A stretch of DNA of 64,000 nucleotides from Ascidiella aspersa. Its lineage: Eukaryota. A model generated the notes under the pieces. The model was not told where the DNA came from. It saw only the letters and a program-made list of their open reading frames with translations, and ran no database searches. The stretch's first letter is position 1. Every line of letters starts with the position of its first letter. The position numbers and the translations under genes were made by a program. The stretch lies in NCBI GenBank assembly GCA_963924565.1, contig OZ004613.1:6386001-6450000 (forward strand), written 5' to 3'. Shown piece by piece: positions 4,844-33,125 of the stretch.

Positions 4844-4891
4844 TCATAGCAGAAGGCATCTCTGGCGTCTGCGCCTTCTCCGGCCTGAACG
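4844..4891 (-). CDS. NLR-A terminal exon encoding polybasic + CLLL prenylation motif
   Basis: gttttgtgttacag|CGT TCA GGC CGG AGA AGG CGC AGA CGC CAG AGA TGC CTT CTG CTA TGA. It is phase 0 like the preceding LRR exon. The paralog copy differs by a synonymous CGT>CGA. Confidence 0.8.
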   Translation of the reverse strand, partial: RSGRRRRRRQRCLLL

Positions 4892-7800
4892 CTGTAACAC
4901 AAAACAAACGCAATAAAATACTTTGTGTGAGTACATTCCAATCAACTTATTCAAGTGCTGCGGAGTCGGTTTAGAACAACCAGTGTCCACCTTGGCCTTG
5001 TTTTGCAAGCACCACCACTATGGGCGAATACACGAGTTCAGAAGCTATAAAAAAATGTAAAATGATGTTCGAGATATTGTTTCCCTGCAAATTGTTTTTG
5101 AATTTGTAGAATCTATTTGAATAAGGAAACTGAAGATGCCACTTGGCGAAATATATTTTCCTTATAAACAAACGTCTGATCCTGTTTTTACTCATGTTTT
5201 TAACTATGAGTTTTACTTGTAAATATACGCGTCAGCGGAGCAGTGATCTATGGCTAAAACCTGCCGCCGATGGTTTTGGTTTCTATAAAGATACACCCTA
5301 ATTATACATATTCTTACAATGTGAGTCTTACCTTGCGCAGAGAATCCACATCAGCTTCATCGATGCCGCATCCTTCTAACCCCAGCTCTTGTACATTGTG
5401 GGCACAAGTTCGGAGGAAAGCGAGTCCTTGCGACCCTAACTTGTTGCGGTTCAGGTTCAAATTCCTCATCTACATAAGCACAACATAATGTTAGACACAA
5501 GCACGTGGTTGGCTGCATAAAGGTTCTAGCAAATTGAACAATGCATATTCGCAACTTACACCACAAAATGTGCTATTCTTAATAGTTAAGGTAACAACTT
5601 TGGGATATATAATATCTATTGGGGCCATGGTGGACGAAATAACTTAATGGGACATTTGTTAACTATAGCAACTGAAAAATGATGGAATGCCTTGTGATTG
5701 GATATTTTGTTATTTTTCTTTAAATACACAATTTGCGTAAAGTTAACATGCGTTTAAAATAAACTAGACCCCTGGTCATTAATACCAGCTACGCGTTTTC
5801 TACACCCTCTCAATTATTTCTGCATAAGTTTTATAAAACACGTGGCCATGGCGCTCCCAAACCTTATTTTTTCCTATTGTATCTATGGAAAAGCAAAAAT
5901 ATTTCGCAATACGCGCCAATTTAACTTATGTTTCTAGTATGTCTTACCCAACTTGAAAACCGGTTTATCCATGGGAGCCGTGTGTCTTACCGCACCCTCG
6001 AAAATTAAAGTTTGGGAACCTAAACTATTTAAAAGTATTTTTTCACGCTAGTGCTTTTCCTTCTTAAAAAACTAGTCACGTTTAGACGTAACGCTATATC
6101 CGTGATTTGGCGTAACATTGTGACATTATACCTGCAATTTTTTAACCCCCCTCAAACAAAAATCTCGCATTTGCCCCTGATAGTAGTAATTATTTAATAA
6201 TGGTGAAATAAAAATTCCATTTACGGAAATATCTTTTGTACACCAGACTGGGGTTCAGCTACCAAATTTTACACGCAATGCTACTGCGTAGTTTATCCAC
6301 CTCAATGTTATATCAATATTCAACAAACCCTTCATTCCACAACATACTTACAGGTCGATCCATTCGTGATATGGCGTCAGTTAGGGGTTTTAGATTGGAA
6401 CCAGCGATCTCGCAATCCCATAATTCCAGCTGGTTGATGTTGTGTACACTTGTTGCCAGGCAACTCAAACCACGTGAATCCATCTTGTTGCCACTTAGGT
6501 TAATTTTTTCCAACTGTTACAATAAAGAAGGTTAAATGGTAAATTTGCCTACTATATAAACTCACACAACATCTACGAATATAGAACCGGTGACTCGAAC
6601 AACATTAATTTAATATTATTTAGCTGAGCAAGGATTGACCATCACCTATAATGCACATTAAAAGGAGTATTTTTGAATTATTAACTCTAGATGAAAAATT
6701 AAATTTCAGAATCCTTAACTTAACTGAAACTAAGGTTGAAGAGATAATCAATATTTCGCTTTATCCAACTTATGTTGTTAAATATATTCGGCTTAACTTT
6801 CGCATAAATAACCATCTAGATTTTCTGCTTTATTTTACAAAGCAAGACGTTTAAAATTCCAAATCCACAAACTCAAAACTTGTTGTGCACAGCGTAATTG
6901 TACAAGGAAGATGAGTTTAAACCACGCCTGAACAACTTAAAATTGTGCAAGGGCCACAACAAGCAAAAAAAACATTTCGCAGTCCGCATACTGAAGTTGC
7001 ATAATAGGTCAGGTAACAACTACTTAAAATCGCAAAGACTCGCTTTTCTCCAAACAATAGGTCAGGTATAACTCTAGGATATTTAATATCTATTGGGGCA
7101 ATGGCGGACAAAATAGTTTTATGGAATATTTTGGTTAACTATGGCATCTCAACATTATTAAATATTTTATTATTTTTAGTAAATCAACTAAAATAGGCCA
7201 GACCCCAGGTCTTTACTTTCGTGTACGCGTTTTTAGAAGAACCACAGTTTAAATATTTCTATATAAGCTTGGCAAAATCACACAAATAAAATGAGGAAAG
7301 AACCCGGGCGTTCGTATTTTAACCTAAACTCCCCTGCTTAAATTTATTGGTATTTTTTTATTGACTTGGCGACAGACGAAGCTATGCGAAATGAAGTGGC
7401 ATTAAATCAAATTGCAAAAGTATGAGTGAACGTAGGCGCTTTTCGGGTTGCAATTACTTCAACAGGAAAATGTTGGTACAAAGTAGTAATTGCAATTCAA
7501 GTGTTGGTTGGTAAATTGCTCTCATAACTAGTAAACACAAACATAAAGGATGTCTAGTTAATAACGGTCCATTGAGAAGAAGTGCTATCAGAATAAAATA
7601 CTCAGACCACGGTTATTTTAGACTCTAGCTAGAAACTATAGGGGTGGATCCATAGGAGACGTATTTTTGCCTATTGTAACAACGTGAATGCAAAACATTC
7701 CGCATTACCCGTGAATCTAAGTTATATTTCTAGTATGTCTTATAGTTCACTTGAAAACCGGGTTATCCATGGGCGCCGCGCGTCTTATCGCACCCTCGAA

Positions 7801-10800
7801 AACGGAAGTGTGGGAAACCTAAACTATTTAAAAGTATTTTTTCACGCTGCCTGCGAGTGTTTTTTGCCTTTATGATATAAAACATGGTCACGTGTTGACG
7901 TAATGCTATGTCCGTTACTTGCGACGTCACGATTTGACGTAACATTGTGACATCATGTCAATATTTTCATGCGTCCTCAAACAAAAGTCCACATTTGCCG
8001 CTGCCAGGAATTACTTAGTAATGGTGACATAAAAATTCCGTTTACGGAAAATTGTTTTGTACACCAGACAGTGATTTAGTTACCAAATCTTACACGCAAT
8101 GCTGCTGACGGTTTATCCACCTCCATATCATTTCAATATTCAGCACATCCTTCATTTCAACAACACACACTTACAGGTCGATCCAATAGTGATATGGCGT
8201 CAGTTAGAGGTTGGAGATCGGAACCAGCGATATCACAACCCTCCAATACCAGCTGGTTGAGGTTGTGTACACTTGTTGCCAGGCAACTCAAACCACGTAA
8301 ATCCATCTTGTTGCCACTAATGTTCAGTTGCTCCAGCTTTTGCAAAAAACGGTTAAACGGTTAAATAAACGGTTAAAGATTTGCCTAGGCTACTCTATAA
8401 ACTCGCACAACATCTACGAACATAGAACCGTACTAATTTAATAATATTTGACTGTGCAAGGATTGACCATCGCCTATAATGCACATTATAAGGAGTATTT
8501 TTGAATTATTAACTGTAGATAAAAAAATAAATTTCAGAATCCTTAAGTTAACTGAATTAAGGTTGAAGCAGTAAATTATTTTCAAATTATAAGAGCCAAT
8601 CAATATTTCGCTTTAATCAACTTATGTTGTTAAATATTCGGCCTAAATTTCGCATATATACCCATCTAGCTTTTCTGTTTTTTTAACCAAGCAACACGTT
8701 TAAAATTCCAAATCCACCAATTCAAAACTCGATGTGCTCAGAGTAATTGTACAAGGAAGATGAGTTTAAACCACGCCTGCACAACTTAAAATGGTACATT
8801 TGCAGGTCGATTCATTTGTGAAATGGCGTCAGTTAGAGGTTTTAGATCGGAACCAGCGATTTCGCAATACGTTAATTACAGATGGTTGATGTCGTGTACA
8901 CTTGTTGCCAGACAACTCAAACCACGTGAATCCAGCATGTTATTATAAAGTTGCAATAATTTAATCTATAGTGACAAGAAGTTTTTATTGTTCCGTATCC
9001 CGCCGATATGAGCGTTCATAACATCCAAGGTGCTGTCTGCTAATCCTGGACCATAAGTGCCTGCAAAGGGGAGCATTTCCCGCCCAAACATCTGGAATAC
9101 TATGGGATAAACAAGAAACTGCTGTGTCTTTAACGCAAAATTATTTTTTCCGTGTAGAATGCGTGGCTACCCCCCCTCCACAAACTGTAAGTAATTGCCT
9201 TATTTTCTCAATACTGCATATTATTTTCTTTTATAACAGGTAGGCTACTGAAATTAGTCAGCATTCATTGTTTCACATAAGTCAAGTTATATGCCTAAAA
9301 TCAAGTCACTACCCAATATTATTAATAATAATGCGTCTATCGTATGGTCTGTGGGAATTAACAACGGTGTCAAAATCCAATACATTCTTATTTGTCTTCT
9401 AACACACGATTGAACAGAACACCAAGAAATTGGTGGAAATAAGCCCCATTGTGACTAACTGAGCGAGCAAAATAGTTTAAATATTTCTTCCAAGTAAATG
9501 TCCCATGTGCTTGCCCCAGGTGGCCAACCCCTCTTTGGCTAACATTTTCGAGTGTTTGTTTGCAGACGGTTTTAAACATCTATCAATATGCACAAGTATT
9601 TTAGAACAGTTAGAATTTTAAACCAAACAAAACAAGAGAGGGTAATTTTGTGAAAACAAGTGCCGACTTTATGCTTCAAAGACGTTGTTTAAGTGAAACA
9701 CCACCGTCCAGCCATGCAACTTTTTATGAAAGTATGTAATTTGGGAGTTGTATGGAAGCGTGTATTATATTCTCACTGATGTATTTAGGATAAACCTACA
9801 TGTCTTGGTATGTTTAATAAAAATGGTCCGTAAAAAAAATTTTTTGCCCCCATCCCCCTAATATATGCAGACTCTCATGCATGTGCGGTTAATGCTAACG
9901 TATTTACTTATCACAACTAGCATAAACATACAGGATGGTTTCTGCATGAGATGGCGTCAGTTAGAGGTTGCAGATTTAACCCAGAAGTGTCGCAATCTGG
10001 CAACTTCAGCTTGTTGATGTTGCTTGCACTTGTTGCCAGGCAACGCAACTCACGTGACCCCAAATTGTCCACGAATAATTCTTCCATCTACACAAAACAT
10101 AGTTTGGTTTGTTAACGGAAGTTTACTGATACTTACTGATAAAACTTATTTAAACAGCTAAATACCGACTGAGGTAAAATTGATTGTAAACCGGAAAACG
10201 TGGTAAAAGTTAAATTTAGATTCTACACGATAAATATTTGCGCGACCACGCTCAATTGCTGTAAAGAGACAAATACATCAAACGTACACCACACGTGATT
10301 CATTATTGATATACCGGGTGACTAAATTTACCGAAACATTTCATAATTCAGTTAAGCAATTTTACAAAATTTGATTTTTCAGATGTTTGAACCGCGTTTG
10401 AATATAGTATTATGTAACGGAATGTGAAATCTGCATAAAACGTAGCCTAACAAGTGCATTTCCAAAAATGTCGTTTTTATTCAGTTGAATTTACAAGTAA
10501 TTGTGCATGCATCTTTCATGGCTTCGTAAACTTTCTGGACTCAAATCAGTCATATTTGCTGAAAGATGGAGAAACCAAATAATTTTTTTAATGAAACTAA
10601 CTTGAAAGTCAATAGACTTAACAATTAGGCGAATTATAATGGCGACAATGACAAAACCATGTAAATGTCAATTGTTACACGTAAGAACTTACAGGTATTT
10701 CTCTACGTGCGATTGCTTCAGTTAGAACCTCGAAATCTGGCAAATCGCTCGTCTTATAACGTTTTATTTCAACCGGTAACTAATTTAGTCGTTCTAAAAG

Positions 10801-13800
10801 TCAAAATGCCATTTATGCACTTAAAACTATTTCTACTAAACTTTCCAATTACATTTTAAAACTCAAACTGTGGTTTATTGAACTTGACATTCTCTTGCTT
10901 CTATGGTGTTTCATTTGAAAATTTTCTTTTTTATTTGCACGTTAACTAATCCCTCATTTAACACGAAACTCGCGTTAAACGTTTCCAGTTAGTATCATCA
11001 ACGAAATATTAAAATCTGGACAATATACCAAAAAACTTATCTACTTGCTAAAAAAATATAAAAGTGGGATGAAACGTTTAACGCTTTAGGGGAGACTGTG
11101 ACTACGGAGAGGTCGGGGGTGGCGGTCCTGCGTTGTATAACATCCCAAACTAATGTTTATTATTAAAATGAAAAACGGCAAGTAACATCGTTACATTAAT
11201 GACCATTATGACATAACCATGTCAATTGTTGTAGGTTAACTTACAGGTGTTTCTCTGCGTGTGATTGCTTCAGTAAGAACTTCGAAACCGGACAGGTCGT
11301 TCGTTTTGTTTAACCACAGGCGGTTTATCTTATGAACGCAGGTGGACAAAACTTTGAAGTCACGTGATCCAGTTGTCCTCACACGTATAAACTCTATCTA
11401 CAAAATAACACCAAGATATGTTGGTGGGTGCGCTGTCCCAGATAGATGAGGTTATCAAACTTATGCGCCGATCAGTTTGCCTCGCCCACCATTGTTGGTT
11501 ACCTTTAGTCTTCTTCTTCTTTTCGTGTGTCAAAAGAAATGCGGGTCAATATGACGTTTTATTTCAAACTGTAATTAATTTAATCGTTTCTAAACGTAAA
11601 ATGCCATATTATTTATGCGCTTAAAACAGTTTTACTAAAACTCCTAGTTACTAAGTTGTAGAGTACGCAAACTTTGCTTTTTTATTTGTACAGTAATTAT
11701 TCCCTCATTAAACACGATACTCGCGTTAAACGGTTAAGTTAGTATCATTAAATATTAGAATATGTATAATTTAGGCGAGCAATGGCGGTCTGTTTATTTT
11801 TGAAGTGGGGTAACAACGTCCTTTATACATCTTTACATCACTCCATGAAAGATTCGTGTGTACGGTCTAGCGACTTGTGTACAATCAATGCTGGGTGAAC
11901 AAACAGAAAGAAAACAGTCTATTTACGTAACAAAATGGTGCCACCATGTGGCGCTATGGTTAAAAGTATCTTTTTAGAGAAAAATGTTGTGTGGCTTTAA
12001 AAAGGCTGCTTTGTTGCCTTTAATTTTTTAATAGTGTATACAAATTTAAACGACAGGCAATCGTAAAACTTCACTAACCTTTTGTTTGGTTTTTGCCATT
12101 GTCTCCATCAACATTTCTAAACCGTTGCCGGTAAATTTGACTGGGCTGTAAAGTTCCCCGATGTCGATGACCAACTCCCTTTGTGTTGCTCGAAGCACTT
12201 GACAGAGACTGGACACTTCACTGGAAAGGATCGTTGCACCCTTTATACGAAGCTCTCCAGCGAGGAAATCGGCCACTTTTGTGGTGATTTCTTCATCGTT
12301 TGATTCCTGCGCCAAACTGCAAAGCTTAAATAAATTGGAGTTGAAGCTCTCCTCATCGTCTAATAAAAGTTGAGGTCCAAGCAAATCAATCAGACCTTTC
12401 AGCAAACGTTTTTTGCTGTCAACATCGGTGGAAGAGATTTTAAAAATTGGCTTTAGCTTACGATGGAGTTCCGTGTTTAGCAACCCGAAAAGAAACCGAA
12501 GAACCATTTCCCAAGTATTACTTTCCATGCTTTGCAGCAGACCAGAAAATGTGGACAGGTCAGTATCGAACAACAGCTTGAGTGATGCAAAAAACTCTTG
12601 CCAAAGAAGATGTAGGAAGAAGAATATTTTTTCCCCTTCCAGTATACGAAGGTTGAGGTCGCTGGAAAAAACTTGCATGTTGAGAAAGTCCTCCATTCCT
12701 TCAGCATCAAGTCCGACTTCATCAAAGTCGTCTTCGTCGAATGTGATCTTGTCATTGAGCATTCCGTGTAATGCCAGGTCAGAAAGTTTGCGCAAAATTC
12801 TGGGGTGTTCCTTAAACTTAGGCGAGTGAATGCAATCGGACACAAAAGCCGCAAACACATCTGTGAGCGTAAAAGTGCCATCTAAAGTGCCATGTTTTAG
12901 GATGTAAGGTGCGACGGTTTTGGCAAATATAGGAAGAAAGCACAAGGCCTTTGCATGTGGGTTTTGACTAAGTGACTTGGTGACCTTCTCGTAATCTTCT
13001 TTCTCTGGGCAAATTTGTCGGAAATACAAATCTTGAGAGCTTTCGTTGAAGCCGATTACCTTGACTACAAAGTGGGGCTTGCAATTAGGATGTAGCTTAA
13101 GAAAAGCTCCCGGTCGTGAAGTAAGCAGCTTGTGAGCATTAGCAAGAATATCGCCACGGAGTATGTTTTGCAGAATGACAACCGGCGTTGCGCGATCGTA
13201 CAATCCGATCACTGGAGCATCCATGTCAAGATCTTTGAACCTAGGTTCGTCCAAACCATCCAGGAAGATAAACAGCTTGTTGGATTTGGAAAGTCTTTCC
13301 AGTATTTGATCATCTATTTCCTTTGTGTGTTTCCAGTTTGGGTCGGATGACAGCAATTCCAAAACGCCTATTTTTTTATTAAGATCCAAGGTCTTCAAGT
13401 ATTTAAAAAGCCAATATCCCTTATCATCTGCAGGTAATTCATCTACAAGCTCCGTTAGTGTCTGTATAATAGCTGTAGTTTTTCCAATTCCAGCTATTCC
13501 AGTCATACCGACCACGTTGCCATGCCTCTTGACGTAATCGTCAGTTGCTGCTTTATTTCTAAATTTCTTACTTTTGGCTTCATCGATTGCTTCTTGTTTT
13601 GCAGCAGTAAATAGTTGGTTAAGTTTAAGCATGTTTGAGTTGACCTGGTTGCCTCTGAGTCGTTTCAACCCTTTTAAACCAAACTCCTCCAATGGTGCTT
13701 GCGAATCCCGAACGACGTCAAGAGGAACTGGGTTGCTTGGCAGAGTTCCGATGACCTTGTCAGCTGCTTCCTGAGACTTTTCTTGCCATGACGCTACTGA

Positions 13801-16800: not shown

Positions 16801-17247
16801 AGTGCGAAAAGTTTCAAGCTTCGCGCAAATTATCTTTTTACATCCGGTTTGTTTACTTAGGATGCTGTCTTTTGAACTAGATCAGCGCTTCTTTACAGTT
16901 GCGCCGTGGAAGGCTGCCAAGTGCGTCGCGGACAAACGGAAAACGCATTCATAAATATTGGATATATGTTTTTTAACATTTTTAAATTTTTTTCGGCAAT
17001 TTAAAAAAACAGCAAGGAATTTAAAAGAAATGCAGGTATACCAAAAAGAAATAGCGCTCGCTTGGTTAACAAACACTGAAATAGATTAACTATTAAAGGT
17101 TAATAAGATAAGTTTCACTTTGTCAAATATCAGTGCTAAACGGATTTAGGAGGAGGATGACATGGAATTAAAAACCCAAAGCAGCAAAGATTTTGATTAA
17201 TTTATACGAGAAGAACTTACTTGGTTTTGGTTTGGAGTATCGGCCAT
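4844..17247 (-). CDS. NLR-A: spliced NACHT-LRR protein (~915 aa) with an N-terminal low-complexity/amyloid-like motif and a C-terminal polybasic-CaaX
   Basis: Exons (minus strand, all AG..GT, phases consistent): 17221-17247 (MADTPNQNQ), 15392-15575, 12079-13796 (NACHT), LRR exons 11245-11397, 9932-10087, 8175-8336, 6352-6513, 5332-5469, and terminal 4844-4891 (RSGRRRRRRQRCLLL*). Confidence 0.85.
8804..8965 (-). pseudogene. Dead LRR exon (pseudoexon) within NLR-A
   Basis: A 162-nt LRR exon homolog, IKLLQLYNNMLDSRGLSCLATSVHDINHL*LTYCEIAGSDLKPLTDAISQMNRP. It has an in-frame TAA (8876-8878) and the donor is changed from GTAAGT to GCAAAT. Confidence 0.85.
10693..10752 (-). pseudogene. Truncated duplicate of the 3' part of the first LRR exon (60 nt, frame-preserving)
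   Basis: aag|TSDLPDFEVLTEAIARREIP|GTAAGT, homologous to the end of exon 11245-11397. The acceptor is weak. Confidence 0.6.
12079..13796 (-). CDS. NACHT NTPase exon of NLR-A (NBD-HD1-WHD-HD2)
   Basis: Walker A GIAGIGKTT, Walker B LFIFLDGLDE, sensor-1 LLTSRP, LCFLP, winged-helix FFFLHLLWQEFFAS and HD2 WEMVLRFLFGL. Acceptor ttttcag at 13797, donor AAG|GTTAGT at 12078. Confidence 0.95.
15197..15338 (-). repeat. Inverted-repeat arm 1 (CAGGGCTG..GAGTCGG family transposon end) with TGCGCATGCGCA
   Basis: Reverse complement of 19003-19146. Related ends occur at ~34625 and ~4955. Confidence 0.75.
15392..15575 (-). CDS. NLR-A exon 2, N-terminal putative amyloid/RHIM-like signalling region
   Basis: tatacag|GENAPQLPPANNQPINILPVNIGDVYGHQGPIQNLHGDVHIYGQQPGPGVAADSTATSSDN-G|GTTGGT. 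The phase-1 end matches the phase of the NACHT exon, and homologous exons exist in B and A'. Confidence 0.85.
16076..16380 (-). pseudogene. hAT (Charlie/Buster-type) transposase C-terminal dimerisation-domain remnant in intron 1 of NLR-A
   Basis: LALKVLLQTPTTYLSEKGFSALVDIKTRKRSCL...LDDLMRGALE...PNW...QQQTSL matches the TTYLCExGFS..IKTKxRNRL...QxSH pattern of Charlie/Buster transposases. A degenerate CAGTG terminus lies at ~15810, and a frameshifted copy at ~55905-56200. Confidence 0.8.
16498..16588 (+). repeat. 25-bp A-rich tandem repeat (aaagttacaaaaacaaagcaaagta x~3.5)
   Basis: Read directly. It is absent from the A' copy (junction near 56270). Confidence 0.85.
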
Positions 17248-18295: not shown

Positions 18296-18640
18296 CAGTG
18301 GTTCTCAACCTTTTTTCTTTCGTGGCCCATTTACGTTGCAAAAAAATTCTGCGGCCCAATAGTTTTATGAAAGAAAAACCACAAAAAAAAGGTTTACAAC
18401 AAAACACAGCAGAACGTATTTCAAACCAGATTATTTACTCAACCGTGTATTAGTGAGATACTTGCGGCTGAACAATAAATTTACATTCCTTTTTGATTCC
18501 TCCCCAAGTCATTATTTCCTGTAATTAAATGTAATGACACAAATGAAACCAAATCTAGCGTTTTTAAATTGGTCTGTGGCCCACCTCAAATGTTCTTATG
18601 GCCCACCAGTAAGCCATGGCCCACTGGTTGAGAACTGCTG
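18296..18640 (+). mobile_element. hAT-type MITE (345 bp)
   Basis: TIRs CAGTGGTTCTCAACC / GGTTGAGAACTGCTG with a perfect 8-bp TSD, ATATAGAT. The duplicate copy is at 57992-58334. Confidence 0.92.
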
Positions 18641-19002
18641 ATATAGATAAAATAAGTGAAATTTCTGGGTTATTAGGCAAAATTTGCTTTAGCGGGTAAA
18701 AAGTTTAGTTACGTCCAGTTAATAATCTTTAATTTTTTTAAATAAATTTACGTCAAGGCAGAATGGCTGCGTTAAATCACAAGTCTTGGCTGAAATTCTC
18801 GTATTAATGTGGTTTAGGATCGGCACCGATGCAACCCTAGTATCGGACGAGTATCAACGATACCACCACTTGGTATCGGGTATCGGCTTTGATCCGATAT
18901 TATCGGACATCCCTATACTTGCAACATGACGAAATATTTACCTAAAATTCGCGCTGAACTTGACATTAGTAATTCTGGAAATAAAGTCATAATACTTTGA
19001 AA

Positions 19003-22560: not shown

Positions 22561-25500
22561 TTATAGTTTGTTCAAATTTGCCAAATCCGCAACAGACCTC
22601 CGAACCTCCTTTGTTGTCCCCTGAGGTGATCTTTGCGTTGACCTTTGTGGTGACCTCTGCGCTGAACTCTCTGTTAATTCCTGTTAAAGCAAAGAAACGC
22701 ACTTGTTTAAAAAATGTTATTGTAAGAATTTGAATGAAGTTTTCACTCTGTCTTTACCAAAACAGATCCCACGTTAATTTTGATATTATTTGCCGATACT
22801 ACTAGGATTTATTGTGTTCACACAACATATAGTATGTAATAAGAAGCATGTGTTGCTACTTTTACGTTGAAATGTTCTTACATGATCTGTCCCATCGTCC
22901 AATTCTTGTTCAGTGTATGTTTCTTGGCTTTGACTTGCTTCTGGTTCCAGTTTTGATTTCGCTTTATCGGAGGCTTCCTTTTCTTGACATAACTGTGAAA
23001 GCAGATTTGTTAAGACGTGAATTTGTTCTTTAACGGGACGTACACGTGGAAACTGTAAAACACAATCTGTGTTCTGTTAAAGTACTTAATCAAACTACTT
23101 AAGAGTTACTCTTGGCGACAAAAATGCAGGACTGCGCAAAAATGTTGTGATTACCTCGATACATTAACTACTCGTATTGTTTGTTTGGTCGGTTGTCTAT
23201 AAAAGCAAAACTTGCTAGAGCGGATATACGCGTATCTGTGTAACAACATTAGGCGTCACTCAGACTAAAAGATAAGTTATTACATTTAAAGTTAGAACAT
23301 GCGTCTATTTAAAACGCAGTAGCCACTATTTAAAAATGCAATAACGCCCGGGTCAAGCCAGGTTGTTTCGTTCTGAACCCGAAGCTTTGTGTTTAGCTTT
23401 TCCTGTTTTAAGTTCTGCTTCTAAGTTCAGTTGGGCCTGGACAGATCCAAGCAAACTTGATCTCAGCGAGAAACAAGCGAATGCATTCGATCGCCAGACC
23501 TCCAAGCGCCTTACTTCACAACTTATTCCACTGAACGTCAATAACTACCATCATTATTCCGCAAATATCGACAGGTTTTTTTAACTAATGTTCGGAACGC
23601 ATCATGACGTCACACGTCTAAACACTGACGTCACTAGTGTCGCATCGTTGTCCCGACAACATATCCTTATGTTATGAGTGCCTACCTTGAGCAGAGAATC
23701 TACATCATTATAATCGATGTCGCAATTATCCAATTCCAGCTCTTGTACATTGTGGGCACAAGTTTGGAGGAAAGCATGTCCTTGCGATCCCAACTCGTTG
23801 TAGCGAAGGTCCAACTTCATCATCTACATAAGCACAACATAATGTAAGATACAAGCAGGTGTTTGGCTGCATACAGGAAGCAGCAAATTGAACAATCCAT
23901 ATTCGCAACTTACACCAAAAAACTGCTATTCGTAATAGGTCAGGAAAAAATGGCCATATCGCCCCCCCCCTAGATCCGCCCCTGCCTGCCGTGAGATTTC
24001 CAACTAATGACCTCGGCCATACCGGGACAGTCACTCTAGCAACTGAGCTATGCAAGATCTAAATACAAACAAAAAGGATGTCCAGTTAATGATGGTTCAT
24101 TGAGAAGAAGTACTATCACAATAAATGCACCCAGGCCAGGGCCATTTAAAGGCCAGTAATCAGGGCCAGAGGGGTCAGTAATCAGGGGTGGTTTATGGGA
24201 GAGGGCACGTGGACATGGCTCCACTTAAAATGTATTTATCCTATTGAAACAAAGCGAATGCAAAAATATTTCGCAATACCCGCGAATCCAAGTTATGTTT
24301 CATTATGTCTTAGCTCACTTTAAAACCGGTTTATCCATGGGCGCCGTGCGTTTTATCGCACCCTCTAAAAATAAAGTTTTGGAAACTTAAACTTTACAAA
24401 GGCATGATTTTACGCTGCACGCAAGTGCTTTTTCGTCTTCATAATGTAAAAAGTAGTCACGTTTTGACGTAACGCTATGTCCATTACTTGTGACGTCACG
24501 ATTTGACGTAGCATTGTGACATCATACCTGCAATTTTTTCATGCGTCCGCAAAAAAAACAAAAAAAAACGCCCCTGCCAGTAATTACTTAGTAATGGTGA
24601 CACAAAAAATTCCGTAACGGAAAAATCTTTTGTACACCAGACAGGTGGTTCAGTTACCAAATTTAACACACTATGCTGTTTTATGTTTATCCAACTCAAT
24701 GTCATTCCAATGTTCAACACATCCTTTATTCCAACAACACACACTTACAGGTCGATCCATTCGTGAAATGGCGTCAGTTAGAGGTTGCAGATCGGAATCA
24801 GCGATTTCGCAATTCCATAATTGCAGCTGGTTGATGTTATGCACACTTGTTGCCAGGCAACTCAAACCACGTAAATCCAGATTGCTCTGATACAGTTCCA
24901 ACAATTCCATCTACAATGACAAGAAGATCCAATTGTTACGCATTCTTATTTGTCTTCTAACAAACGTTTGCATAGAAAAATCGAGATATTGGTGTAAATA
25001 AGCCTAATTGTGAACACTGAGCGCGCAAAATAGTTTGTATCCAACTATAACAATCAGTTTTTTGAACGTTTGTGGTTTACAGATTGCTTCCAAGTAAATG
25101 TCCCATGTGCTTGTCCCAGGTCTCCAAACCCTTGAAGCGTATCTTTTTATTATATGTGTTACGCGACATGCTACACGCGACACGCCTATTCTATCGTGCT
25201 AGTGCCGAGCGGTCATTCGCTCGATCATTCGAAAATACAAGCTGACGTGTGCACTGCTCTGGCTCCTACACCCTCTTTGGCTGACGTTTTTGAGTGTTTG
25301 TTTGCAGACCTTTTTAAACATCTATCAATATGCAAAAGGCTGTTAGCACAGTTGGAATTATTAACGAGACAAAACCAGAGAGGGTAATTTTGTGAAAACA
25401 AGTGCCGACTTTATTTTTAAAGATGGTTTTAAGTGAAACACAACCTCCAGCCATGCAACTTTTCATAAAAGTATGTAATTGGCAAGTTGTTTGGAAGCGT

Positions 25501-28500
25501 GTATTAAATTCTCACTGATGTATTTAGGATAAACCTACATGTCTCGGTATGTTTAATATAAACGGTCCGTAAAAAATATTTTTACCCCCATTTCCCTGAT
25601 ATATGCAGACACTCATGCATGTGCGGTTAATGCTAACGTATTTACTTATCACAACTAACTCAAACATACCGGATGGTTTCTGTGTGAGATGACGTCAGTT
25701 AGAGGTTGCAGATTTGACTCAGAAGTGTCGCAGAAAAACAATTTCAGCTTGTTGATGTTGGTTGCACTTGTTGCCAGGTAACGCAACTCACGTGACCCCA
25801 AATTGTCCACTAAGAATTCTTCCATCTACACAAAATATAGTTTGATTTGTTAACGGAAGTTTTAAACTTACTGATAAAACCTATTGAAACAGCTAAATAC
25901 GGACAGAGGTAAAATTGATTGTAAACCGGAAAAGTTGTAAATGTTAATTTTAGATTCTAGTCGATAAATATTTGCGCGACCAATTGCCTTAAAAAACAAC
26001 ACATCAAACGTACACGACGCGTGATTCATCATTAGGAATAATCAGAGTTACTAAATTTACCGTAAAAAAATATAATTCAGTTGACTAATTCTAAAAAAAT
26101 TGATTTTCTAGATTTTTAAACCGTGTTTGAATATCGAGTATTATGTAACGCAGAGGTTCCCAACGTGGGCGGTATCGCCCCCTTGTGGGCGTTGGCGAGC
26201 TACAAGGGGGCCTTTTGGGTCTTTTCATAATTTGGGGGGCGCTGAACGTAAAACCATGTTCGTGTCAAACTGATATTTATTTAGTCGTTTGAAAAATTAC
26301 AGATGCCATATTTATGCGGTTAAAACAAGTTTAAAAAATATTCCTAATCAGTTATACATATAGATTTGTTAAAGCGTGATTTACAAACAGTTTTAAAACT
26401 AAACTGTGGTTTATTGAACCTGACATTCGCCAGCTTGAACTGTCTTTTGTGCAAAACTTTGCTTTTGTATTTGTACTTTAATTATCCTCCTCATTAAACA
26501 CGAAACTCGCGTTGAAACGTTTCCGGTTAGTATCATCAACTAAATATTAAAAAATAAGTGAAATTAAAAAAAAAAAAACAGTTGCTAAAATATCCAAGAG
26601 TGTGTGGAAACGTTTAACAGTTTAAGGGAGACAGTGACTACGAAGGGGTCGGGGGTTGCGTAGTATAATATCGCAAACACTAATATGCATGAACAAAGTG
26701 TAATACGTTAACATCGCAATTTGTCGCGAGATTTATAAAATATGTTATTTAAGTTTGTAGTATTAACCAGCCTGGTGTCGACGCACTTGTCCCATCTACC
26801 CATGCTTAGTGGGACTTTCCCTGTGCAATGGTTGACCCACGGTGATGCCCCTTACCAGTTTAACACGTCCCCGTTTCACCCAAGGACTTCCCCTATCAGC
26901 TTGATTGTCGATAATGTGATTGGAGAATCGCGCCCGCCCCATCGCAATAATGACCATTATGACATATTCATGTCAGTTGTTGCACGACATAAATCATGTC
27001 AGTTGTTGCTAAGTTAACTTACAGGTGTTTTTCTGTGTGCGATTGCTTCAGTAAGAACCTCGAAACCGGACAGATCGCTCGTATTGACCAACCACAGGCG
27101 GTTGATCTTGTGGACGCAGGTGGATAAGACAGTGAAGTCACGTGATCCAGTTGTCGTCACACTTACAAGCTCCATCTACAAAATAACAACAAGATTTGTT
27201 GGACTGTGCGCTGTCCCAGATAGATTCAGATTCAGATTCAATTTATTTTTGTGCATGTTTGCAAACATCGAAAAAACAAAATAACATAAATAATAACACA
27301 AGGACAGCGAAAGGACCATTCGGTCATCGAGTCGAGCTGCCCCAGATCGATGAGGTTCTTAAACTTATGCGCCGATCAGTTTGCCCTGCCCGCCATTATT
27401 GGCTACCTTTAGCCAATGACGTGGTTTAAAAAGTATACGCAAAGTCGCTGAAGAAAAAATGCGGGTCGATATGACGTTTTATTGTAAACTGTAATTAATT
27501 GAGTCGTTCCTAAAGTTAAAATGCCATAATATTTATGCGCCTAAAACAATTTTACTAAAATTCCTATTAACTCAGCTATAGAGTACGCACATTGTTAAGT
27601 CGTAAGATGCGAACAGTTTTAAAGTCAAACTGTATACAGTTATTGATCCTAAAATTTGCTTGCTTGAACTGTGTTTTATTTAAAACTTTGCTTTTGTACT
27701 TGTACGTTAATTATCCCCTCATTAAACACGAAACTCGCGCTAAAACGTTTCCAGTTAATATTATCAACGAAATATTAAAATCTGGATAGTTTATTAAAAA
27801 CTTATCCAATTGCTAAAAAGTCCAAAAGTGTGTGGAAATGTTTAACGTTTAGGGGATACAATGACTACGAAGGGGTCGGTGGTTGCGGTGTATAACATCC
27901 CAAACTAATATGCATTAACAAAATTAAAAACGGTTAAATCATAATTTTCGCGCCAATTAAGAGTGTTATATCATAAAATAAAACAGAAAGATGTTAGTTT
28001 ATAAACTTATTTTTAGCTAAATAGACTCAATTAAAGTCGCGAATTTTATTACCCAGCAAAGTTGTTGAAACGATTTTGGTTATTTGTTCTAATTTCACCG
28101 GTTTAATCTCAGAGGCGAGCAATGACGGTCTGTTTTTCGGCATAACAACGCCATTTAGACATCGTAACATGAGACCATGAATATTTTTGGCCGATACAGC
28201 AATGTGTGTGCCCAATTCTCGGTGAACAACAGGAAAGCAAACCGTTGCGAAAAAGCAAGTTGTCTACTAATGTCAAAAAACTCGGCACACTCTATTGCCA
28301 TCATGTGGTAATAGAACTTTAAAGTACCTTTTAAGAGCAGGGGTCGGCAACCCCGCCAATGTAATTTATCCGGCCCTCCACCTCTTTTGCAAATTTGGCA
28401 AGAGGCCGTTGTTTAAACTGCATAAATGTAAAAATTTTACATACTTTTTTTTTCATTGTTTTCGGCCCAAATGCGACGTACATGAACTAGCACTATCACA

Positions 28501-31500
28501 ATCGACGTTTCGCTATCTTAGTATGTCTGAATGCGTTTAATGGTGCTGCACACTATAGTTCCTGTGTGGTTTAAATATATTAAAATAAACTATGTCGACA
28601 TTTTAAGAGTCCTATTCAAATAACATCATAAAGTTATATCATATCCTATTTAAATTAGATTAACGATTAAATTTATCGCATATCTTTATTTTTACTTTTA
28701 TTTTGCGATGATGAACTTACACCAGACCTGGGCAACATACGGCCCACGGGCCGGTTCCGTCCCGCCAAGCAGTTTAATCCGGCCCGCGGCATATTTGCAT
28801 TGAAATATGGAAGCAAAGGCGAGTTTCTACATGCTTGGTTATATCGTGAACACTTTTTTAGGGACGTCTCTAGTCACGACTCGCCAAATCGATTTTTACC
28901 CTGTTTTAAATACTAAAACGGAAATTGTTTTCGCGCTTCGCGCGAATCTCTCTTGTATTGCTCGTATCTAGCCTAATATTTATATATTTTTGGTCTTAAA
29001 ATATGAAAGCAATACTGACGGTTTTCTAAACTCTAAAATATACCGATTCGCTTTTTATAAACCAAAGTTAGGGAATTTAATGTTGTGTGTTTCTCCCGAT
29101 TTATATCGTCTTTGCAATAAGGCTGCTGTACCGCAAGTAACACATCGGTAACTTAAAACTTTAAAATGCAAAATTCTTTTCTACGAAACTTTTACATTAA
29201 ATCATTAAATTTTGCATTTTAAAATAAGTTTAGTCGCAATTTTTTCGCGCTTCGCTCGACGTCTTGTGGCTTTGTCTAAATTCATTAAATTGCACATTTT
29301 CGCACAACTCTAAACGTAATAACGAGTTCGTTAGCTTATTTGTTTTATACAGAGTAGTGACGTCATATTGCGTGTATTTTAGATCTTATATTTGATCCCG
29401 CCCGCCACAACATTTTAGGTTTCTCATACGGCCCGCGGCTAAAAATAATTGCCCACCCCTGATTTACACCTTAATCCAGAATTATTCCACCCTGGTATTT
29501 GATTCTCGGTAACAACCAACTTTGAAAGGTTCAATTACAGTTAACAGACATTAGTTATCCCAACCATAACCCATAACCAAATAGAGAACCATTAATGTCG
29601 CTTATGATTAAACTATGTTTATCGGCGGCAGCACACTCGACGAACCTCACGTCCTTTCGCTACACCAGGGACATCAAATATTTGCAAAATGTTTAATCGA
29701 TTTTAATCCACAAACGCTTTTTTTCGCGCTTGGCGCAAACGCTTTACCGCCTTTTTTTCAAATCTTAGATAATAGCTGATTTTTAACTAAAAGAACTAGG
29801 TCGCCACTGATTAACAGTTATTATGATAAAATGCTCAAAACTCAACATTTTAGGAAAATTTTAGGTTTATATTTATTACGGCTCGCCGAGCCCTTTTCAA
29901 GTTTGTGTCAGGTCCGCGACTAGAAAAAGGTTGCCGACTTCTGCTTTAGAGAGTTAAATGTTGTGTGGCTTCAAAACGGTGCAGGGTGCGTTTGGCGTTT
30001 TTCGCTGCTTTGTTGCATTTAATATAAAATGGGGTATAAAAATTAAAAAAACTAGAAATCGTAAAACTTCACAAACCGTGTGTTTGGTTTTCGCCATTGT
30101 CTCCATCAACATTTCTAAACCGTTGCCGGTAAATGTGACTGAGTAGTTATCCCCGATGCTGATGACCAGCTCCCTTTGTCTTGCTCGAAGCACGTGACAG
30201 AGACTTGACACTTCACTGGGAAGGATCGTTCCCCACTTTATACGAAGCTCTCCAGGGAGGGAATCGATCACTTTCGCGGTGATTTCATCATCGTTTGATT
30301 CCTGCGCCAAACTGCAAAGCTTAAACAATTTGGAGTTAAAGCTCTCGCCATCGTTTGATAAAAGTTGAGATACAAGCGAATCAATCAGACATTTTAGCAA
30401 ACCTTCCTTACTGGCAACATCGGTAGAAGAGATTTTAAAAATAGGCTTTAGCTTTTGGTGGAGTCCCGTGTTTAGCAACCCAAAAAGAAACCGAAGAACC
30501 ATTTCCCACGTATTACTTTCCATGCTTTGTAGCAGCCCAGAAAATGTAGCCAGGTCTGTATCGAACAACAGCTTGAGTGATGTGAAAAACTCTTGCCACA
30601 GAAAATGAATAAAGAAGAATACTTTATCCCCTTCCAGTAAACGAAGGTTGAGGTCGCTGGAGACAGCTTGCATGTTGAGAAAGTCCTCCATTCCTTCATA
30701 ATTAAGTCCGACTTCATCAAAGACTTCTTCGTCGAACATGATCTTGTCGTTGAGCATTCCGTATAAAGCCAGATCTGAAAGTTTGCGCAAAATTCTTGGA
30801 TGTTCCTTAAACTTAGGCGAGTGAATGCAATCAAACACAAAAGCCGCAAACACATCTGTGAGCGTAAAAGTGCCATCTTTAGTGCCATGCTTTATGATGT
30901 AAGGAGCGACTGTTTTAGCAAATATAGGAAGAAAGCACAAAGCCTTTGCATGTGGGTTTTGACCAAGTGACTTGATGACCTTCTCATAATCTTCTTTCTC
31001 CGGGCAAATTTGTCGGAAATACAAATCTTGAGAGCTTTCGTTGAAGCCGATTACCTTGACTACAAAGTGGGGCTTGCAACTTGGGTGTAGCTTGAGAAAA
31101 GCTCCCGGTCGTGAAGTAAGCAGCTTGTGAGCATTCGCAAGAATATCGCCACGGAGTAGGTTTTGCAGAATGACAACCGGCGTTGCGCGATCGTACAATC
31201 CGATCACTGGAGCATCCATGTCAAGATCTTTGAACCTAGGTTCGTCCAAACCATCCAGGAAGATAAACAGCTTGTTGGATTTGGAAAGCCTTTCCAGTAT
31301 TTGATCATCTATTTCCTTTGTGTGTTTCCAGTTTGGGTCGGATGACAGCAATTCCAAAACGCCTATTTTTTTATTAAGATCTAAAGTGTTCAAGTATTTA
31401 AAAAGGCAATACCCTTTTTGATCTGCTGGTAGTCCATCTGCAAGCTCATTTAGTGTCTGTATAATAGCTGTTGTTTTTCCAATTCCAGCTATTCCAGTCA

Positions 31501-33125
31501 TACCGACCACGTTACCATGTCTCTCGACATAATCGTCATTGGCTGTATTATTTGTAAATTTCTTACTTTTGGCTTTAATGATTGCTTCTTGTTTAGCAGC
31601 AGTAAATAGTTGGTTGAGTTTAAGCGTGGTTGAGTTGACCTGGTTGTCTCTGAGTCGTTTCAATCCTTTTAAACCAAACTCCTCCAAAGGTTCTTGCGAA
31701 TCCCGAACGACGTCAAGAGGAACTGGGTTGCTTGGCAGAGTCCCGATGACCTTGTCAGCTGCTTCCTGTGACTTTTCTTTCCATGATGCTTCTGAATAAT
31801 AATAATAATAAACCTATTATTTTCATATCCACATTTTTTATCGTAAGGATGACCTTAATCTGTATTTTATTTAGTGTGGGCTGTCTCGGCAATAAGCGGC
31901 TTACAAAGGCGTGGGTTAAAGCCATATGTGACGTTAAAAAGGTCCTCTCCGACCTTAAGCGAAACGTTAACTTTATAGCGCATCAAATTACCAAACTTTA
32001 AACCTTAGCAAACAGCAGAACCCCAACGAGAGGCGGAAGGCGTGCCATTTTGGTTTGCACTAACGGTTACCTTCATCTGTTTTTAGGTTAACAGTCCAAC
32101 ATTTAAATGGCTATGGCGATATGATAAAATGTCTGAGGATTCTATTATAAGCTGTGTATAAAAATACCAAACCCAAATTTAACTTGTTATTTTGTAACTT
32201 TAGTTTAAAATGCAATTTGGGGACGCTTTGATTCTAGGTACTGATTTGTGCTATATAAACATATCCTACCAAAATGCTGCTTAATACAAATTAACCAGTA
32301 ACAGTTTGCTCTTGTGGATAAAACAAGAACGATTTACTTAACCGTGAAATACAATCAGCTATTGGAAACGCATGTAGCATTCTATATAGTATGTATTATC
32401 TTTCATTTTGATTGACTAAATGTTAGTGCTACAATTGTGTGGTTATGGTTAATGCTTATTAAAGTGACGTTCAAGAATTCCGCATTTCTTTATGTCTATG
32501 TCTCACTGTTATGAGTAAAAGTTATCACTAACCACTGTTAAAGGGCGCTGCTATGTCATGAGCCACTCCAGGCCATGGTTGATAGAAGTTGCCTTGAACG
32601 ATAAGTTGATGTATTGGACCACGACTCTGTATGTCACCAATGTTTAGAAGCTCGGTATTGATGGACTGGCTGTTTTCAGGTGGATTCTGAGCTGCATTTT
32701 GATCCTGTGGCGAAATCGTTGATGCTGTTAAACTTAAGTGTATTTGTGATACCACATCCTAACATGTATTTTCTACTACAAAAGAAACAAATCTAATAAC
32801 AACATTTCAAGATAACTGTTTCGGTATATTGTGACTATAAAGTTAACTTTCTTTCCCGCTCAGACATAGTTCTCCACATTTAACTGAAATATGTATTTCT
32901 TACCAATTGTACATTTTACAATGTTTTATCTAAAGATAAATAGAGCGGCAAAGCAAAGCACTCTATATTATAACCTAGTAAAAATCAGTCGGACTTTCGT
33001 TAACGTTGCTGCAAATACTAGAAAATTTAGTCGAAAGTCGAACACATACTTTTAGTTTAAACTAAATCCTCGATCCACCAATTACGAAAAAAACTTACTT
33101 GATTTTGGTTGCCAGTCTCGGCCAT
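22561..33125 (-). CDS. NLR-B: spliced NACHT-LRR protein (~917 aa) with an N-terminal amyloid-like motif and a disordered S/T/Q-rich C-tail
   Basis: Exons: 33099-33125 (MAETGNQNQ), 32533-32704, 30077-31791 (NACHT), LRR exons 27023-27175, 25670-25825, 24749-24910, 23686-23823, tail exon 22882-22992 (LCQEKEASDK...DDGTDH|GTAAGA) and terminal 22561-22680 (ELTESSAQRSPQRSTQRSPQG...ANLNKL*). All splice phases are consistent. Confidence 0.82.
27222..27340 (-). mobile_element. 5'-truncated non-LTR retroposon fragment with a (GAATCT)n tail
   Basis: Flanked by a duplicated GCTGYCCCAGAT and absent at the homologous site in NLR-A (~11432-11450). It has a microsatellite tail and a small hairpin, GACC-GAAT-GGTC. 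Confidence 0.7.
28338..29943. mobile_element. Non-autonomous hAT element in an NLR-B intron, with a nested element at 28723-29461
   Basis: TIR CAGGGGTCGGCAACC / GGTTGCCGACTTCTG with a degenerate TSD (TTTAAGAG/CTTTAGAG). The empty site is seen in NLR-A at ~11970. The nested element runs CAGACCTGGGCAA...TTGCCCACCCCTG with TSD ACTTACAC/ATTTACAC. Confidence 0.85.
30077..31791 (-). CDS. NACHT NTPase exon of NLR-B
   Basis: Same motifs as A (GIAGIGKTT, LFIFLDGLDE, LLTSRP, FFFIHFLWQEFF). Acceptor ttattcag at 31792, donor ACG|GTTTGT. Confidence 0.95.
32533..32704 (-). CDS. NLR-B exon 2, N-terminal putative amyloid/RHIM-like region
   Basis: ccacag|DQNAAQNPPENSQSINTELLNIGDIQSRGPIHQLIVQGNFYQPWPGVAHDIAAPFNS-G|GTTAGT, homologous to A exon 2. 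Confidence 0.82.

What the first reader, a model, noticed from the sequence alone, without database searches (positions are those of the whole stretch)
4844..33125. Candidate new immune system: a paired animal NLR locus with amyloid-like N-termini and contrasting C-termini (prenylated A-type, phospho-repeat-tailed B-type), duplicated as a unit
Seen in sequence: two adjacent same-strand NACHT-LRR genes share exon architecture and a similar NACHT. Neither has a CARD/PYD/DD/TIR; only ~70 low-complexity residues precede the NACHT exon. They end in unrelated tails, polybasic-CLLL in A and an E/K/S/Q-rich tail with STQRSPQG repeats in B. The A-then-B order recurs 40 kb later. Established: animal NLRs usually signal through death-fold domains, fungal and bacterial NLRs often signal through short N-terminal amyloid motifs, and plants use linked sensor/helper NLR pairs. 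Inference: this could be a membrane-anchored NLR plus a soluble partner that nucleate an amyloid signalosome.
Basis: partly seen in the sequence, partly recalled or inferred. Interest (0 to 1): 0.92.

Follow-up and report, generated by a model that had tools for sequence, protein, structure and literature searches.

The report
Sea-squirt NLR gene array, not pairs
The two genes are ordinary neighbours in a tandem array of about 80 sea-squirt-specific NLR immune-receptor genes that carry a short, unnamed N-terminal motif instead of a death domain; they are not a dedicated sensor/helper pair.

Summary
The two minus-strand NACHT-LRR genes are real. Gene A is 914 codons (17247 to 4844) and gene B is 917 codons (33125 to 22561). 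All splice sites are canonical, and RNA supports the join between the motif exon and the NACHT exon. Neither gene has a death-fold domain. A 9-residue start exon and a roughly 60-residue Gly/Asn/His-rich exon precede the NACHT exon. A ends in a polybasic CLLL tail. B ends in an acidic/lysine-rich exon plus an STQRSPQG-repeat exon.

The pairing idea fails. The genome, from an ascidian, has at least 79 such NACHT exons, nearly all on one contig. It has 62 motif exons in two main variants, 20 polybasic tail exons (13 with CaaX) and at least 40 acidic tail exons. Motif type and tail type combine freely, and gene order does not alternate. The 98% repeat covers only gene A. The gene after A' matches B at about 86% and has a damaged P-loop and a deletion in its NACHT exon. 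B's near-identical copy lies 99 kb away beside non-CLLL genes.

The motif matches no RHIM or other Pfam model, no solved structure and nothing convincing among 1.84 billion proteins. It occurs on no non-NLR gene here. Amyloid signalling therefore stays an untested guess.

The scan had already noted this family on neighbouring DNA (s1-792890).

The parts
17221..17247 (-). Gene A coding exon 1 (start codon plus 8 codons, then donor GTAAGT)
   Evidence: The sequence was read. It is homologous to B's start exon (81% over 70 nt). Phase 0 fits the next exon. RNA depth here is on one strand only (bin 17150-17349). No splice-junction read was seen for this exon.
15392..15575 (-). Gene A motif exon (61 codons + 1 nt), A-type variant of the family's N-terminal motif
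   Evidence: Acceptor and donor were read. An RNA joint runs from 15392 to the NACHT exon in run X5 (2 reads) and in X3 contigs. The genome holds 62 copies of this exon.
12079..13793 (-). Gene A NACHT-WH-HD2 exon (1715 nt)
   Evidence: Pfam NACHT 3.3e-13, NOD2_WH 1.2e-10, NLRC4_HD2 3.1e-06.
5332..11397 (-). Gene A LRR region: five phase-0 exons (11397-11245, 10087-9932, 8336-8175, 6513-6352, 5469-5332)
   Evidence: All have canonical AG/GT sites and lengths that are multiples of 3. LRR_6/LRR_1 hits are below threshold on three of them.
4844..4891 (-). Gene A terminal exon: polybasic run plus CLLL and stop (CaaX box)
   Evidence: The genome has 20 copies of this exon: 11 end CLLL, 2 end CLLQ, and 7 share a stop before the Cys. 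No RNA check was possible.
33099..33125 (-). Gene B coding exon 1
   Evidence: There is an in-frame stop six codons upstream within the same exon.
32533..32704 (-). Gene B motif exon (B-type variant)
   Evidence: About 14 B-type copies exist in the genome. It is 45% identical to the A-type exon.
30077..31791 (-). Gene B NACHT-WH-HD2 exon
   Evidence: Pfam NACHT 4.2e-15.
23686..27175 (-). Gene B LRR region: four phase-0 exons (27175-27023, 25825-25670, 24910-24749, 23823-23686)
   Evidence: An LRR_6 hit falls on the last exon.
22561..22992 (-). Gene B tail: acidic/lysine-rich exon 22992-22882 and last exon 22680-22561 with 1.5 STQRSPQG units
   Evidence: The splice phases fix the reading frame. 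The first tail exon has 51 candidate copies in the genome.
42029..60833 (-). Recent copy of gene A with its flanks (A'; NACHT ORF 52004-53650, motif exon 55086-55268, CLLL exon 44832-44879)
   Evidence: 95-98% identity to 2018-21552.
62114..62668 (-). Last exon of the next gene (B'), with 20.6 copies of the 24-nt STQRSPQG unit. The rest of that gene lies beyond the window.
   Evidence: Its NACHT exon in L031 has a changed Walker A and an internal deletion.

Best explanation
A and B are two members of a large, young NLR family specific to this ascidian lineage, laid out as a tandem array over several megabases of one chromosome.

Each gene encodes four parts in order:
- a 9-residue start;
- a roughly 60-residue Gly/Asn/His/Pro-rich exon with a conserved core (N-x-G-D ... 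G-P-I ... G-D/N, with Gly about every 7 residues);
- a NACHT-WH-HD2 ATPase module on one exon;
- 4-5 two-repeat LRR exons.

The genes end in interchangeable tail exons. One is a polybasic exon, with or without a CaaX box. The other is an acidic/lysine-rich exon followed by a variable STQRSPQG repeat. The A-B-A' pattern in the window comes from a recent duplication of about 19.5 kb that carries gene A alone inside this array. It does not reflect a functional pair.

Inferred mechanism:
- Each protein acts as a stand-alone cytosolic receptor.
- The LRRs hold it off until a ligand is sensed.
- NACHT-driven oligomerisation then clusters the N-terminal motifs, which act as the signalling end. This could work by proximity-induced beta-strand self-assembly or by docking an unknown adaptor.
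- Members with a CaaX tail are held at membranes by geranylgeranylation plus the polybasic patch.

The gene structures, family size, mosaic arrangement and lack of a death-fold domain are shown. Everything about signalling is inference.
For: - Domains and exon structure.
- RNA: the motif exon is spliced to the NACHT exon, and coverage is strand-specific.
- Family size: 79 scored NACHT exons out of 291 first-look candidates. Only 2 contain stops, and nearly all lie on contig C7 between 0.3 and 6.65 Mb.
- Motif exon: 62 copies, all but two of them (C6:31280327 and C7:6632131) lying 1-5 kb upstream of a NACHT exon. All 48 exact matches to the core pattern fall in those exons, against 3 for the reversed control pattern.
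- Motif conservation: 7 invariant and 5 near-invariant positions among 23 diverse copies.
- Tails.
- Independent assortment of ends and no alternation in gene order.
- Extent of the duplication.
- Purifying selection: pN/pS is 0.2-0.3 in the NACHT core and 0.44 in the A-type motif core, against about 1.1 in its flanks.
- Structure prediction: AlphaFold gives no folded domain for the motif exon, only short strands at mean pLDDT 54.
- Host: HSP70 is closest to Phallusia (84%) and Ciona (81%).
- Isolation of the family: the closest database protein to the NACHT exon is only 31% identical.
Against: - No RNA evidence was obtained for the exon 1-exon 2 join or for any tail exon.
- The two X5 junction reads sit 2 nt away from the canonical acceptor, and the X3 contigs differ by 5 nt. 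These reads may come from paralogues.
- Many copies are so young that the nucleotide sequence of the motif core is identical in more than 25 of them. Conservation is therefore partly a matter of age.
- pN/pS in B-type motif exons is about 0.9.
- No ligand, adaptor or downstream partner is known.
- The LRR calls are below Pfam thresholds on single exons.
Confidence: 0.75

Rival explanations
1. A (prenylated, at the membrane) and B (soluble, with a phospho-repeat tail) form a dedicated linked sensor/helper pair. Their N-terminal motifs co-assemble into an amyloid signalosome, and the pair is duplicated as a unit.
For: - The two genes are adjacent on the same strand with contrasting tails.
- A gene with a B-type tail again follows A'.
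- One further case exists of a CLLL/A-motif gene followed by an acidic-tail/B-motif gene, at C7:3930033 and 3980389.
Against: - Motif type and tail type assort independently. B-type motifs occur with CLLL tails, and A-type motifs occur with acidic tails.
- Of nine CaaX genes mapped on C7, only two are followed by a B-motif gene.
- The 98% repeat covers A only. B and B' are about 86% alike, and B' is damaged and carries an A-like motif.
- B's 98-100% copy at C7:6515214 has non-CLLL neighbours.
- The genes lie in tandem rather than head-to-head, and no integrated decoy domain was seen.
Confidence: 0.05
2. Across the whole family, the N-terminal exon is a new amyloid-like signalling motif, functionally like RHIM, HET-s or the bacterial amyloid signalling (BASS) motifs. 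It is nucleated by NLR oligomerisation.
For: - It sits exactly where fungal, bacterial and amphioxus NLRs carry such motifs (PMC4262963).
- It is short, non-globular and rich in G/N/Q/H, with alternating hydrophobic residues.
- Positions N21, G23, G30, I32 and G37 are invariant.
- Only short strands are predicted.
- Two paralogues read N-M-Q-I-G-D, close to the RHIM tetrad.
- Distinct motif variants exist, as expected for specificity classes.
Against: - No Pfam RHIM or HET-s-type hit appears even at E<=10.
- No match to solved RIPK1/RIPK3 RHIM chains.
- No relative among 1.84 billion proteins.
- No non-NLR gene in this genome carries the motif.
- Constraint on the exon is weak.
Confidence: 0.25
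3. The N-terminal exon is merely a disordered leader or a short linear docking site for a folded adaptor. The tails are fast-evolving and largely neutral appendages of a young, partly decaying gene array.
For: - Mean pLDDT is 54.
- pN/pS is about 0.9-1.1 outside the A-type core.
- 7 of 20 polybasic exons have lost the Cys.
- The STQRSPQG unit varies from 1.5 to 20.6 copies.
- B' is damaged.
Against: - Seven invariant positions persist across variants that are otherwise only 43-57% identical.
- 77 of 79 NACHT exons are intact and under purifying selection.
- The CaaX box is retained on contig C6 in a copy whose exon region is only 81% identical in DNA.
Confidence: 0.35

Closest known systems
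Amphioxus RHIM-NACHT-repeat proteins (e.g. BF82280; Kajava et al. 2014, PMC4262963)
   Same: Both are chordate NLR-type proteins in which a short non-globular motif occupies the position usually held by a CARD-like six-helix domain.
   Different: The motif here is not detected by the RHIM profile and has no strict I/V-Q-I/V-G tetrad in A or B. It has a Gly spacing of about 7 residues. That paper states that tunicates appear to lack RHIMs. No other motif-bearing proteins were found here.
Fungal NWD2/HET-S and bacterial amyloid-motif (BASS) NLR-effector systems
   Same: A short motif lies N-terminal to a NOD/NACHT ATPase with C-terminal repeats, and there are several motif variants.
   Different: Those systems are defined by the same motif on a separate, usually adjacent, effector protein. 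In this genome, all motif copies but two belong to NLR genes, and neither of those two is shown to lie in another gene.
Lineage-specific NLR expansions (zebrafish NLR-C on chromosome 4, sea urchin, amphioxus)
   Same: Tens to hundreds of young paralogues lie in tandem arrays. Each has one large NACHT exon, modular LRR exons and variable C-terminal additions.
   Different: The host is an ascidian, whereas Ciona is credited with about 16 NLRs (PMC8455134). The N-terminal motif exon and the polybasic-CaaX and STQRSPQG tails are not described for those families, to my knowledge.
Plant paired NLRs (RGA4/RGA5, RRS1/RPS4; from my own knowledge)
   Same: Two NLR genes lie side by side.
   Different: Plant pairs are typically head-to-head and co-inherited, with an integrated decoy in the sensor. 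Here the genes lie in tandem within an array, with freely recombined ends.
Rho/Rac polybasic-CaaX tails (Rac1 ends in CLLL; from my own knowledge)
   Same: A polybasic run lies directly before C-L-L-L at the extreme C-terminus. This is the textbook signal for geranylgeranylation and binding to acidic membranes.
   Different: Here it is attached to an NLR. Prenylation is untested, and a third of the paralogous exons have lost the Cys.

Membership tests
NLR (NACHT-LRR) family | NACHT NTPase with Walker A/B motifs, followed by winged-helix and helical domains | tested here: met
   Pfam NACHT, NOD2_WH and NLRC4_HD2 are found in A, B and A'. GIGKT and LDGLDE motifs are visible in the ORFs.
NLR (NACHT-LRR) family | C-terminal leucine-rich repeats | tested here: inconclusive
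   LRR_6/LRR_1 hits fall on 4 of 9 exons, all below the gathering score when exons are scanned singly. The repeat pattern is visible by eye.
Death-fold NLRs (CARD/PYD/DD/DED N-terminus) | A six-helix death-fold domain N-terminal to the NACHT | tested here: not met
   Pfam finds nothing in the motif exons or in the pre-NACHT part of the NACHT exon. AlphaFold predicts no helices for the motif exon. B's start codon is fixed by an upstream in-frame stop.
RHIM-containing proteins | A match to the RHIM profile, or the I/V-Q-I/V/L-G core tetrad | tested here: not met
   None of 23 motif exons hits RHIM in Pfam at E<=10. No PDB RHIM chain matches. A reads V-N-I-G and B reads I-V-Q-G. Only two paralogues read M-Q-I-G.
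Amyloid-signalling NLR/effector systems (HET-s and bacterial BASS type) | The same motif on a separate effector protein | tested here: not met
   62 motif exons were found. 60 lie 1-5 kb upstream of a NACHT exon. The other two are an orphan next to a retrotransposon (L050) and C7:6632131, which has no scored NACHT exon nearby. All 48 core-pattern matches lie inside those exons.
Amyloid-signalling NLR/effector systems (HET-s and bacterial BASS type) | The motif forms self-templating beta-rich fibrils | not testable with these tools
   This needs biochemistry. The four-copy complex prediction gave no verdict.
Paired (sensor/helper) NLRs | Conserved adjacency and co-duplication of the two types | tested here: not met
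   The map of about 58 genes shows no alternation. The recent duplication covers A only. B's recent copy has different neighbours.
CaaX-prenylated proteins | Cys-aliphatic-aliphatic-X as the last four residues | tested here: met
   A, A' and 9 other paralogues end in CLLL plus stop, and 2 end in CLLQ. Whether the exon is used in mRNA, and whether the protein is prenylated, was not tested.

The most novel reading that the evidence does not exclude
Ascidians, reported to lack RHIMs, have evolved their own short beta-assembly (amyloid-like) signalling motif on a family of about 60 NLRs. The motif variants would act as specificity classes, and a subset of receptors would be anchored to membranes by geranylgeranylation. 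This would be a chordate counterpart of fungal and bacterial amyloid-signalling NLRs that works without a death-fold domain.
Probability: 0.2. Interest if true: 0.8.

Novelty: new variant of a known kind. Interest (0 to 1): 0.45.

Why it matters
Tunicates are the closest living relatives of vertebrates. Ciona has been credited with only about 16 NLRs, and ascidian NLRs are described simply as lacking an N-terminal domain (PMC8455134, PMC11508797). This genome shows an ascidian with at least 79 NLR genes in one array. About 60 of them carry a conserved but unnamed N-terminal motif exon, and their tails are modular, including a textbook prenylation signal. If the motif proves to be a self-assembling signalling element, it would give a chordate example of NLR signalling without a death fold. 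It would also revise the view that tunicates have no RHIM-like signalling. If it does not, the locus is still a clear example of how exon shuffling and segmental duplication diversify an immune-receptor array.

Tried and rejected
- **Complex prediction.** Four copies of the motif exon gave 'no answer' (score 0.01). This is not evidence either way.
- **Motif-profile search of 1.84 billion proteins.** It returned nine hits. Six are TPR-repeat proteins and three are other proteins with bacterial repeat or surface-type domains, all scoring by summed weak repeat matches (N-L-G-x-x-Y-x-x-Q-G resembles the motif core). I rejected them as noise. The same artefact explains the designed-TPR hit in the PDB. 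A TPR reading is also unlikely given the Pro/Gly content and the absence of predicted helices.
- **ESM Atlas.** Nothing scored above 0.80.
- **Second protein search** with the WH-HD2 half of the NACHT exon: no hit.
I worked from coordinates and small pieces instead.
- **The divergent subfamily** (60-65% identity, C7 0.3-1.7 Mb): no motif-like or domain-bearing exon could be recognised in the 5.5 kb upstream of two members. Its N-terminus stays unknown.
- **Reads.** They could be laid only once, so only the 5' part of gene A was tested. The tail exons and the exon 1-exon 2 join have no junction evidence.
- **Poly(A) signals** downstream of the stops were uninformative.
Every exon was searched by reference.
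Full report
**What is in the window**

All three long ORFs in the window lie on the minus strand (12046-13692, 29954-31687 and 52004-53650). They encode NACHT, NOD2-type winged-helix and NLRC4-type HD2 modules. I read the splice sites directly.

Gene A has these exons:
- a 27-nt start exon, with ATG at 17247 and donor GTAAGT;
- a 184-nt motif exon (15575-15392);
- a 1715-nt NACHT exon (13793-12079);
- five phase-0 LRR exons;
- a 48-nt last exon (4891-4844) encoding a polybasic run and CLLL.

Together they give 914 codons, and all sites are canonical AG/GT.

Gene B has the same plan. Its ATG is at 33125, its motif exon is 32704-32533 and its NACHT exon is 31791-30077. It has four LRR exons. It ends with a 37-residue acidic/lysine-rich exon (22992-22882) and a last exon (22680-22561) holding 1.5 STQRSPQG units, for 917 codons. 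The phase-0 junctions fix the reading frame of the repeat. B's start codon is preceded by an in-frame stop in the same exon. A's start follows by homology (81% over 70 nt).

**RNA evidence**

I could lay reads only once, and I chose the 5' part of A.
- The RNA run X5 gives strand-specific coverage of the NACHT exon, the motif exon and the start-exon bin.
- Two X5 reads join 15392 to the NACHT exon. Contigs of X3 carry the same join.
- The X5 join sits 2 nt from the canonical acceptor, and the X3 contigs differ by 5 nt. The reads were accepted at 95-99% identity, so they may come from paralogues.
- This shows that the family splices the motif exon to the NACHT exon. It does not prove this exact junction in gene A.
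- The tails and the exon 1-exon 2 join have no junction evidence.

**No death-fold domain**

Pfam finds nothing in the motif exons or in the roughly 90 residues before the P-loop. AlphaFold, given 23 paralogous motif exons, predicts only two short strands at mean pLDDT 54.

**The wider family**

The host is an ascidian. An intronless HSP70 from the same assembly is closest to Phallusia (84%) and Ciona (81%), which agrees with earlier notes from this scan.

A search of the whole assembly with A's NACHT exon found 291 first-look candidates, of which 79 were scored.
- 58 are 78-100% identical to A.
- 21 are 60-65% identical.
- Only two contain a stop.
- Nearly all lie on contig C7 between 0.3 and 6.65 Mb.

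The terminal exons are also widespread.
- The motif exon has 62 copies: about 45 A-type, about 14 B-type and a few rarer forms.
- The polybasic tail exon has 20 copies. Of these, 11 end CLLL, 2 end CLLQ, and 7 share a stop just before the Cys.
- The acidic tail exon has 51 candidates.

**The pair hypothesis fails**

I put all these coordinates on one map.
- Each NACHT exon has one motif exon 1-5 kb upstream and a tail 6-30 kb downstream.
- The two ends combine freely. A-type motifs occur with acidic tails (the commonest combination) and with CLLL tails. B-type motifs occur with CLLL tails (for example C7:2401029 and 5415166) and with acidic tails.
- Many polybasic-tail genes also have an acidic-type exon 1.5-3.4 kb before the polybasic exon.
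- Gene order shows no alternation.

The local repeat is also not a duplicated unit.
- The 95-98% repeat is 2018-21552 against 42029-60833, which is gene A and its flanks only.
- B and the gene after A' are about 86% alike.
- That gene (L031) carries a degenerate A-like motif exon, a changed Walker A and a roughly 150-residue deletion.
- B's true recent copy has a 100% identical acidic exon and a 98% identical motif exon. It lies 99 kb away at C7:6515214, among genes with acidic tails.

**What the N-terminal motif is**

Among 23 diverse copies that are 43-93% identical to A's exon, seven positions are invariant: I15, N21, G23, G30, I32, G37 and D53. Five more are nearly so. The core reads N-x-G-D ... 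G-P-I ... G-D/N, with Gly about every seven residues.

Selection on the exon is modest.
- Within A-type copies the core has pN/pS 0.44, against about 1.1 in the flanks.
- B-type copies are near 0.9.
- The NACHT core is at 0.2-0.3.
- Many copies are so young that the core DNA is identical in more than 25 of them, so age explains part of the conservation.

The motif has no detectable relatives.
- No Pfam family matches at E<=10, including RHIM.
- No solved RHIM chain matches.
- Nothing credible appears among 1.84 billion representative proteins.
- The ESM Atlas gives nothing.

Within this genome the motif is confined to the NLR family. All 48 exact core-pattern matches, against 3 for the reversed control, lie in the known motif exons. 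Two motif copies have no scored NACHT exon nearby. One sits beside a reverse-transcriptase fragment, and the other is C7:6632131.

The feature that defines fungal and bacterial amyloid-signalling NLR systems is the same motif on a separate effector. That feature is absent here.

There is one loose lead. The closest outside relative of the NACHT exon is 31% identical and sits on a 7-kb metagenome contig. It has an open frame with a His-rich 'G-D-I-H-Y-H' stretch 1.2 kb upstream of its NACHT ORF.

**Comparison with what is known**

Kajava et al. (PMC4262963) described amphioxus proteins with a RHIM in front of a NACHT and repeats. They stated that tunicates seem to lack RHIMs. Ascidian NLRs are described as NACHT-LRR without an N-terminal domain (PMC11508797), and Ciona is credited with 16 NLRs (PMC8455134).

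Three things are therefore new here:
- the size of the expansion in an ascidian;
- the conserved N-terminal motif exon and its variants;
- the modular tails, including a Rac-like polybasic CLLL signal.

None of this needs a new kind of system. It is a new variant of the lineage-specific NLR expansions seen in zebrafish, sea urchin and amphioxus.

**Mechanism**

My best estimate is a set of stand-alone receptors. NACHT oligomerisation clusters the N-terminal motif, which then signals either by beta-strand self-assembly (about 25%) or by docking an unknown adaptor. CaaX-bearing members would sit at membranes. All of this is inference.

**Limits**

- Exon models were searched exon by exon and never joined.
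- The N-termini of the divergent subfamily were not found.
- The complex prediction gave no verdict.

Noticed in passing
L031:5474-7127 (C7:6455474-6457127), just beyond the window's end: The gene that owns the 20-copy STQRSPQG exon has a NACHT exon with a changed Walker A (G-I-G-K-T replaced by E-I-G-K-N) and a roughly 150-residue internal deletion. Its motif exon is a degenerate A-type form with a 6-residue gap. It is probably a decaying copy or a decoy.
   Followed up: partly
L036, L039-L041, L048, L049 (polybasic tail exons of paralogues): A 9-nt tandem duplication inside the polybasic exon occurs in six copies. In five of them it adds a second Cys four residues before the CaaX Cys (C-Q-R-C-L-L-L). 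This could be an added palmitoylation site.
   Followed up: no
L063 and L064 (C7:6593123 and C7:6632131): Two paralogues carry a third motif variant that reads N-M-Q-I-G-D-I-Q and is richer in His. This is the closest any copy comes to the RHIM Q-I-G core.
   Followed up: partly
L050:4324-4491 (C6:31280324-31280491): An orphan A-like motif exon lies on another contig with no scored NACHT exon nearby. A reverse-transcriptase fragment lies 1.5 kb downstream on the other strand.
   Followed up: partly
L073:3226-3435: A 7-kb metagenome contig encodes the closest outside relative of the NACHT exon (31% identical). It has an upstream open frame with a His-rich G-D-I-H-Y-H stretch, in a position like that of the motif exon. 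This may be a distant counterpart in another animal.
   Followed up: no
window 35688-35762 (+): A tRNA or tRNA-like sequence (Rfam RF00005, 42 bits) lies in the spacer between gene B and A'. It may belong to the tRNA-derived retroelement that earlier notes on this genome describe.
   Followed up: no
window 14700-15150, 16750-16950, 18150-18750, 19350-19550: Very high-copy interspersed repeats lie in A's intron and upstream spacer. Read depth is thousands of times that of neighbouring bins, on both strands, with sharp loose ends at 14840 and 14877.
   Followed up: no
window 60703-61070 and 16498-16588: There are two non-coding tandem repeats: 79 nt x 4.7 copies and 25 nt x 3.6 copies.
   Followed up: no
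G000 C7:0.3-1.7 Mb (e.g. L071, L072): A second NLR subfamily of at least 21 genes is 60-65% identical to A in the NACHT exon. It has no detectable copy of the motif exon, and its N-terminus could not be recognised in the 5.5 kb upstream.
   Followed up: partly
window 13791-13797 / 15392: RNA junction reads place the acceptor 2 nt (X5) or 5 nt of different sequence (X3) away from the canonical TAG|CG acceptor of gene A. This points to paralogue cross-mapping or alternative acceptor use.
   Followed up: no
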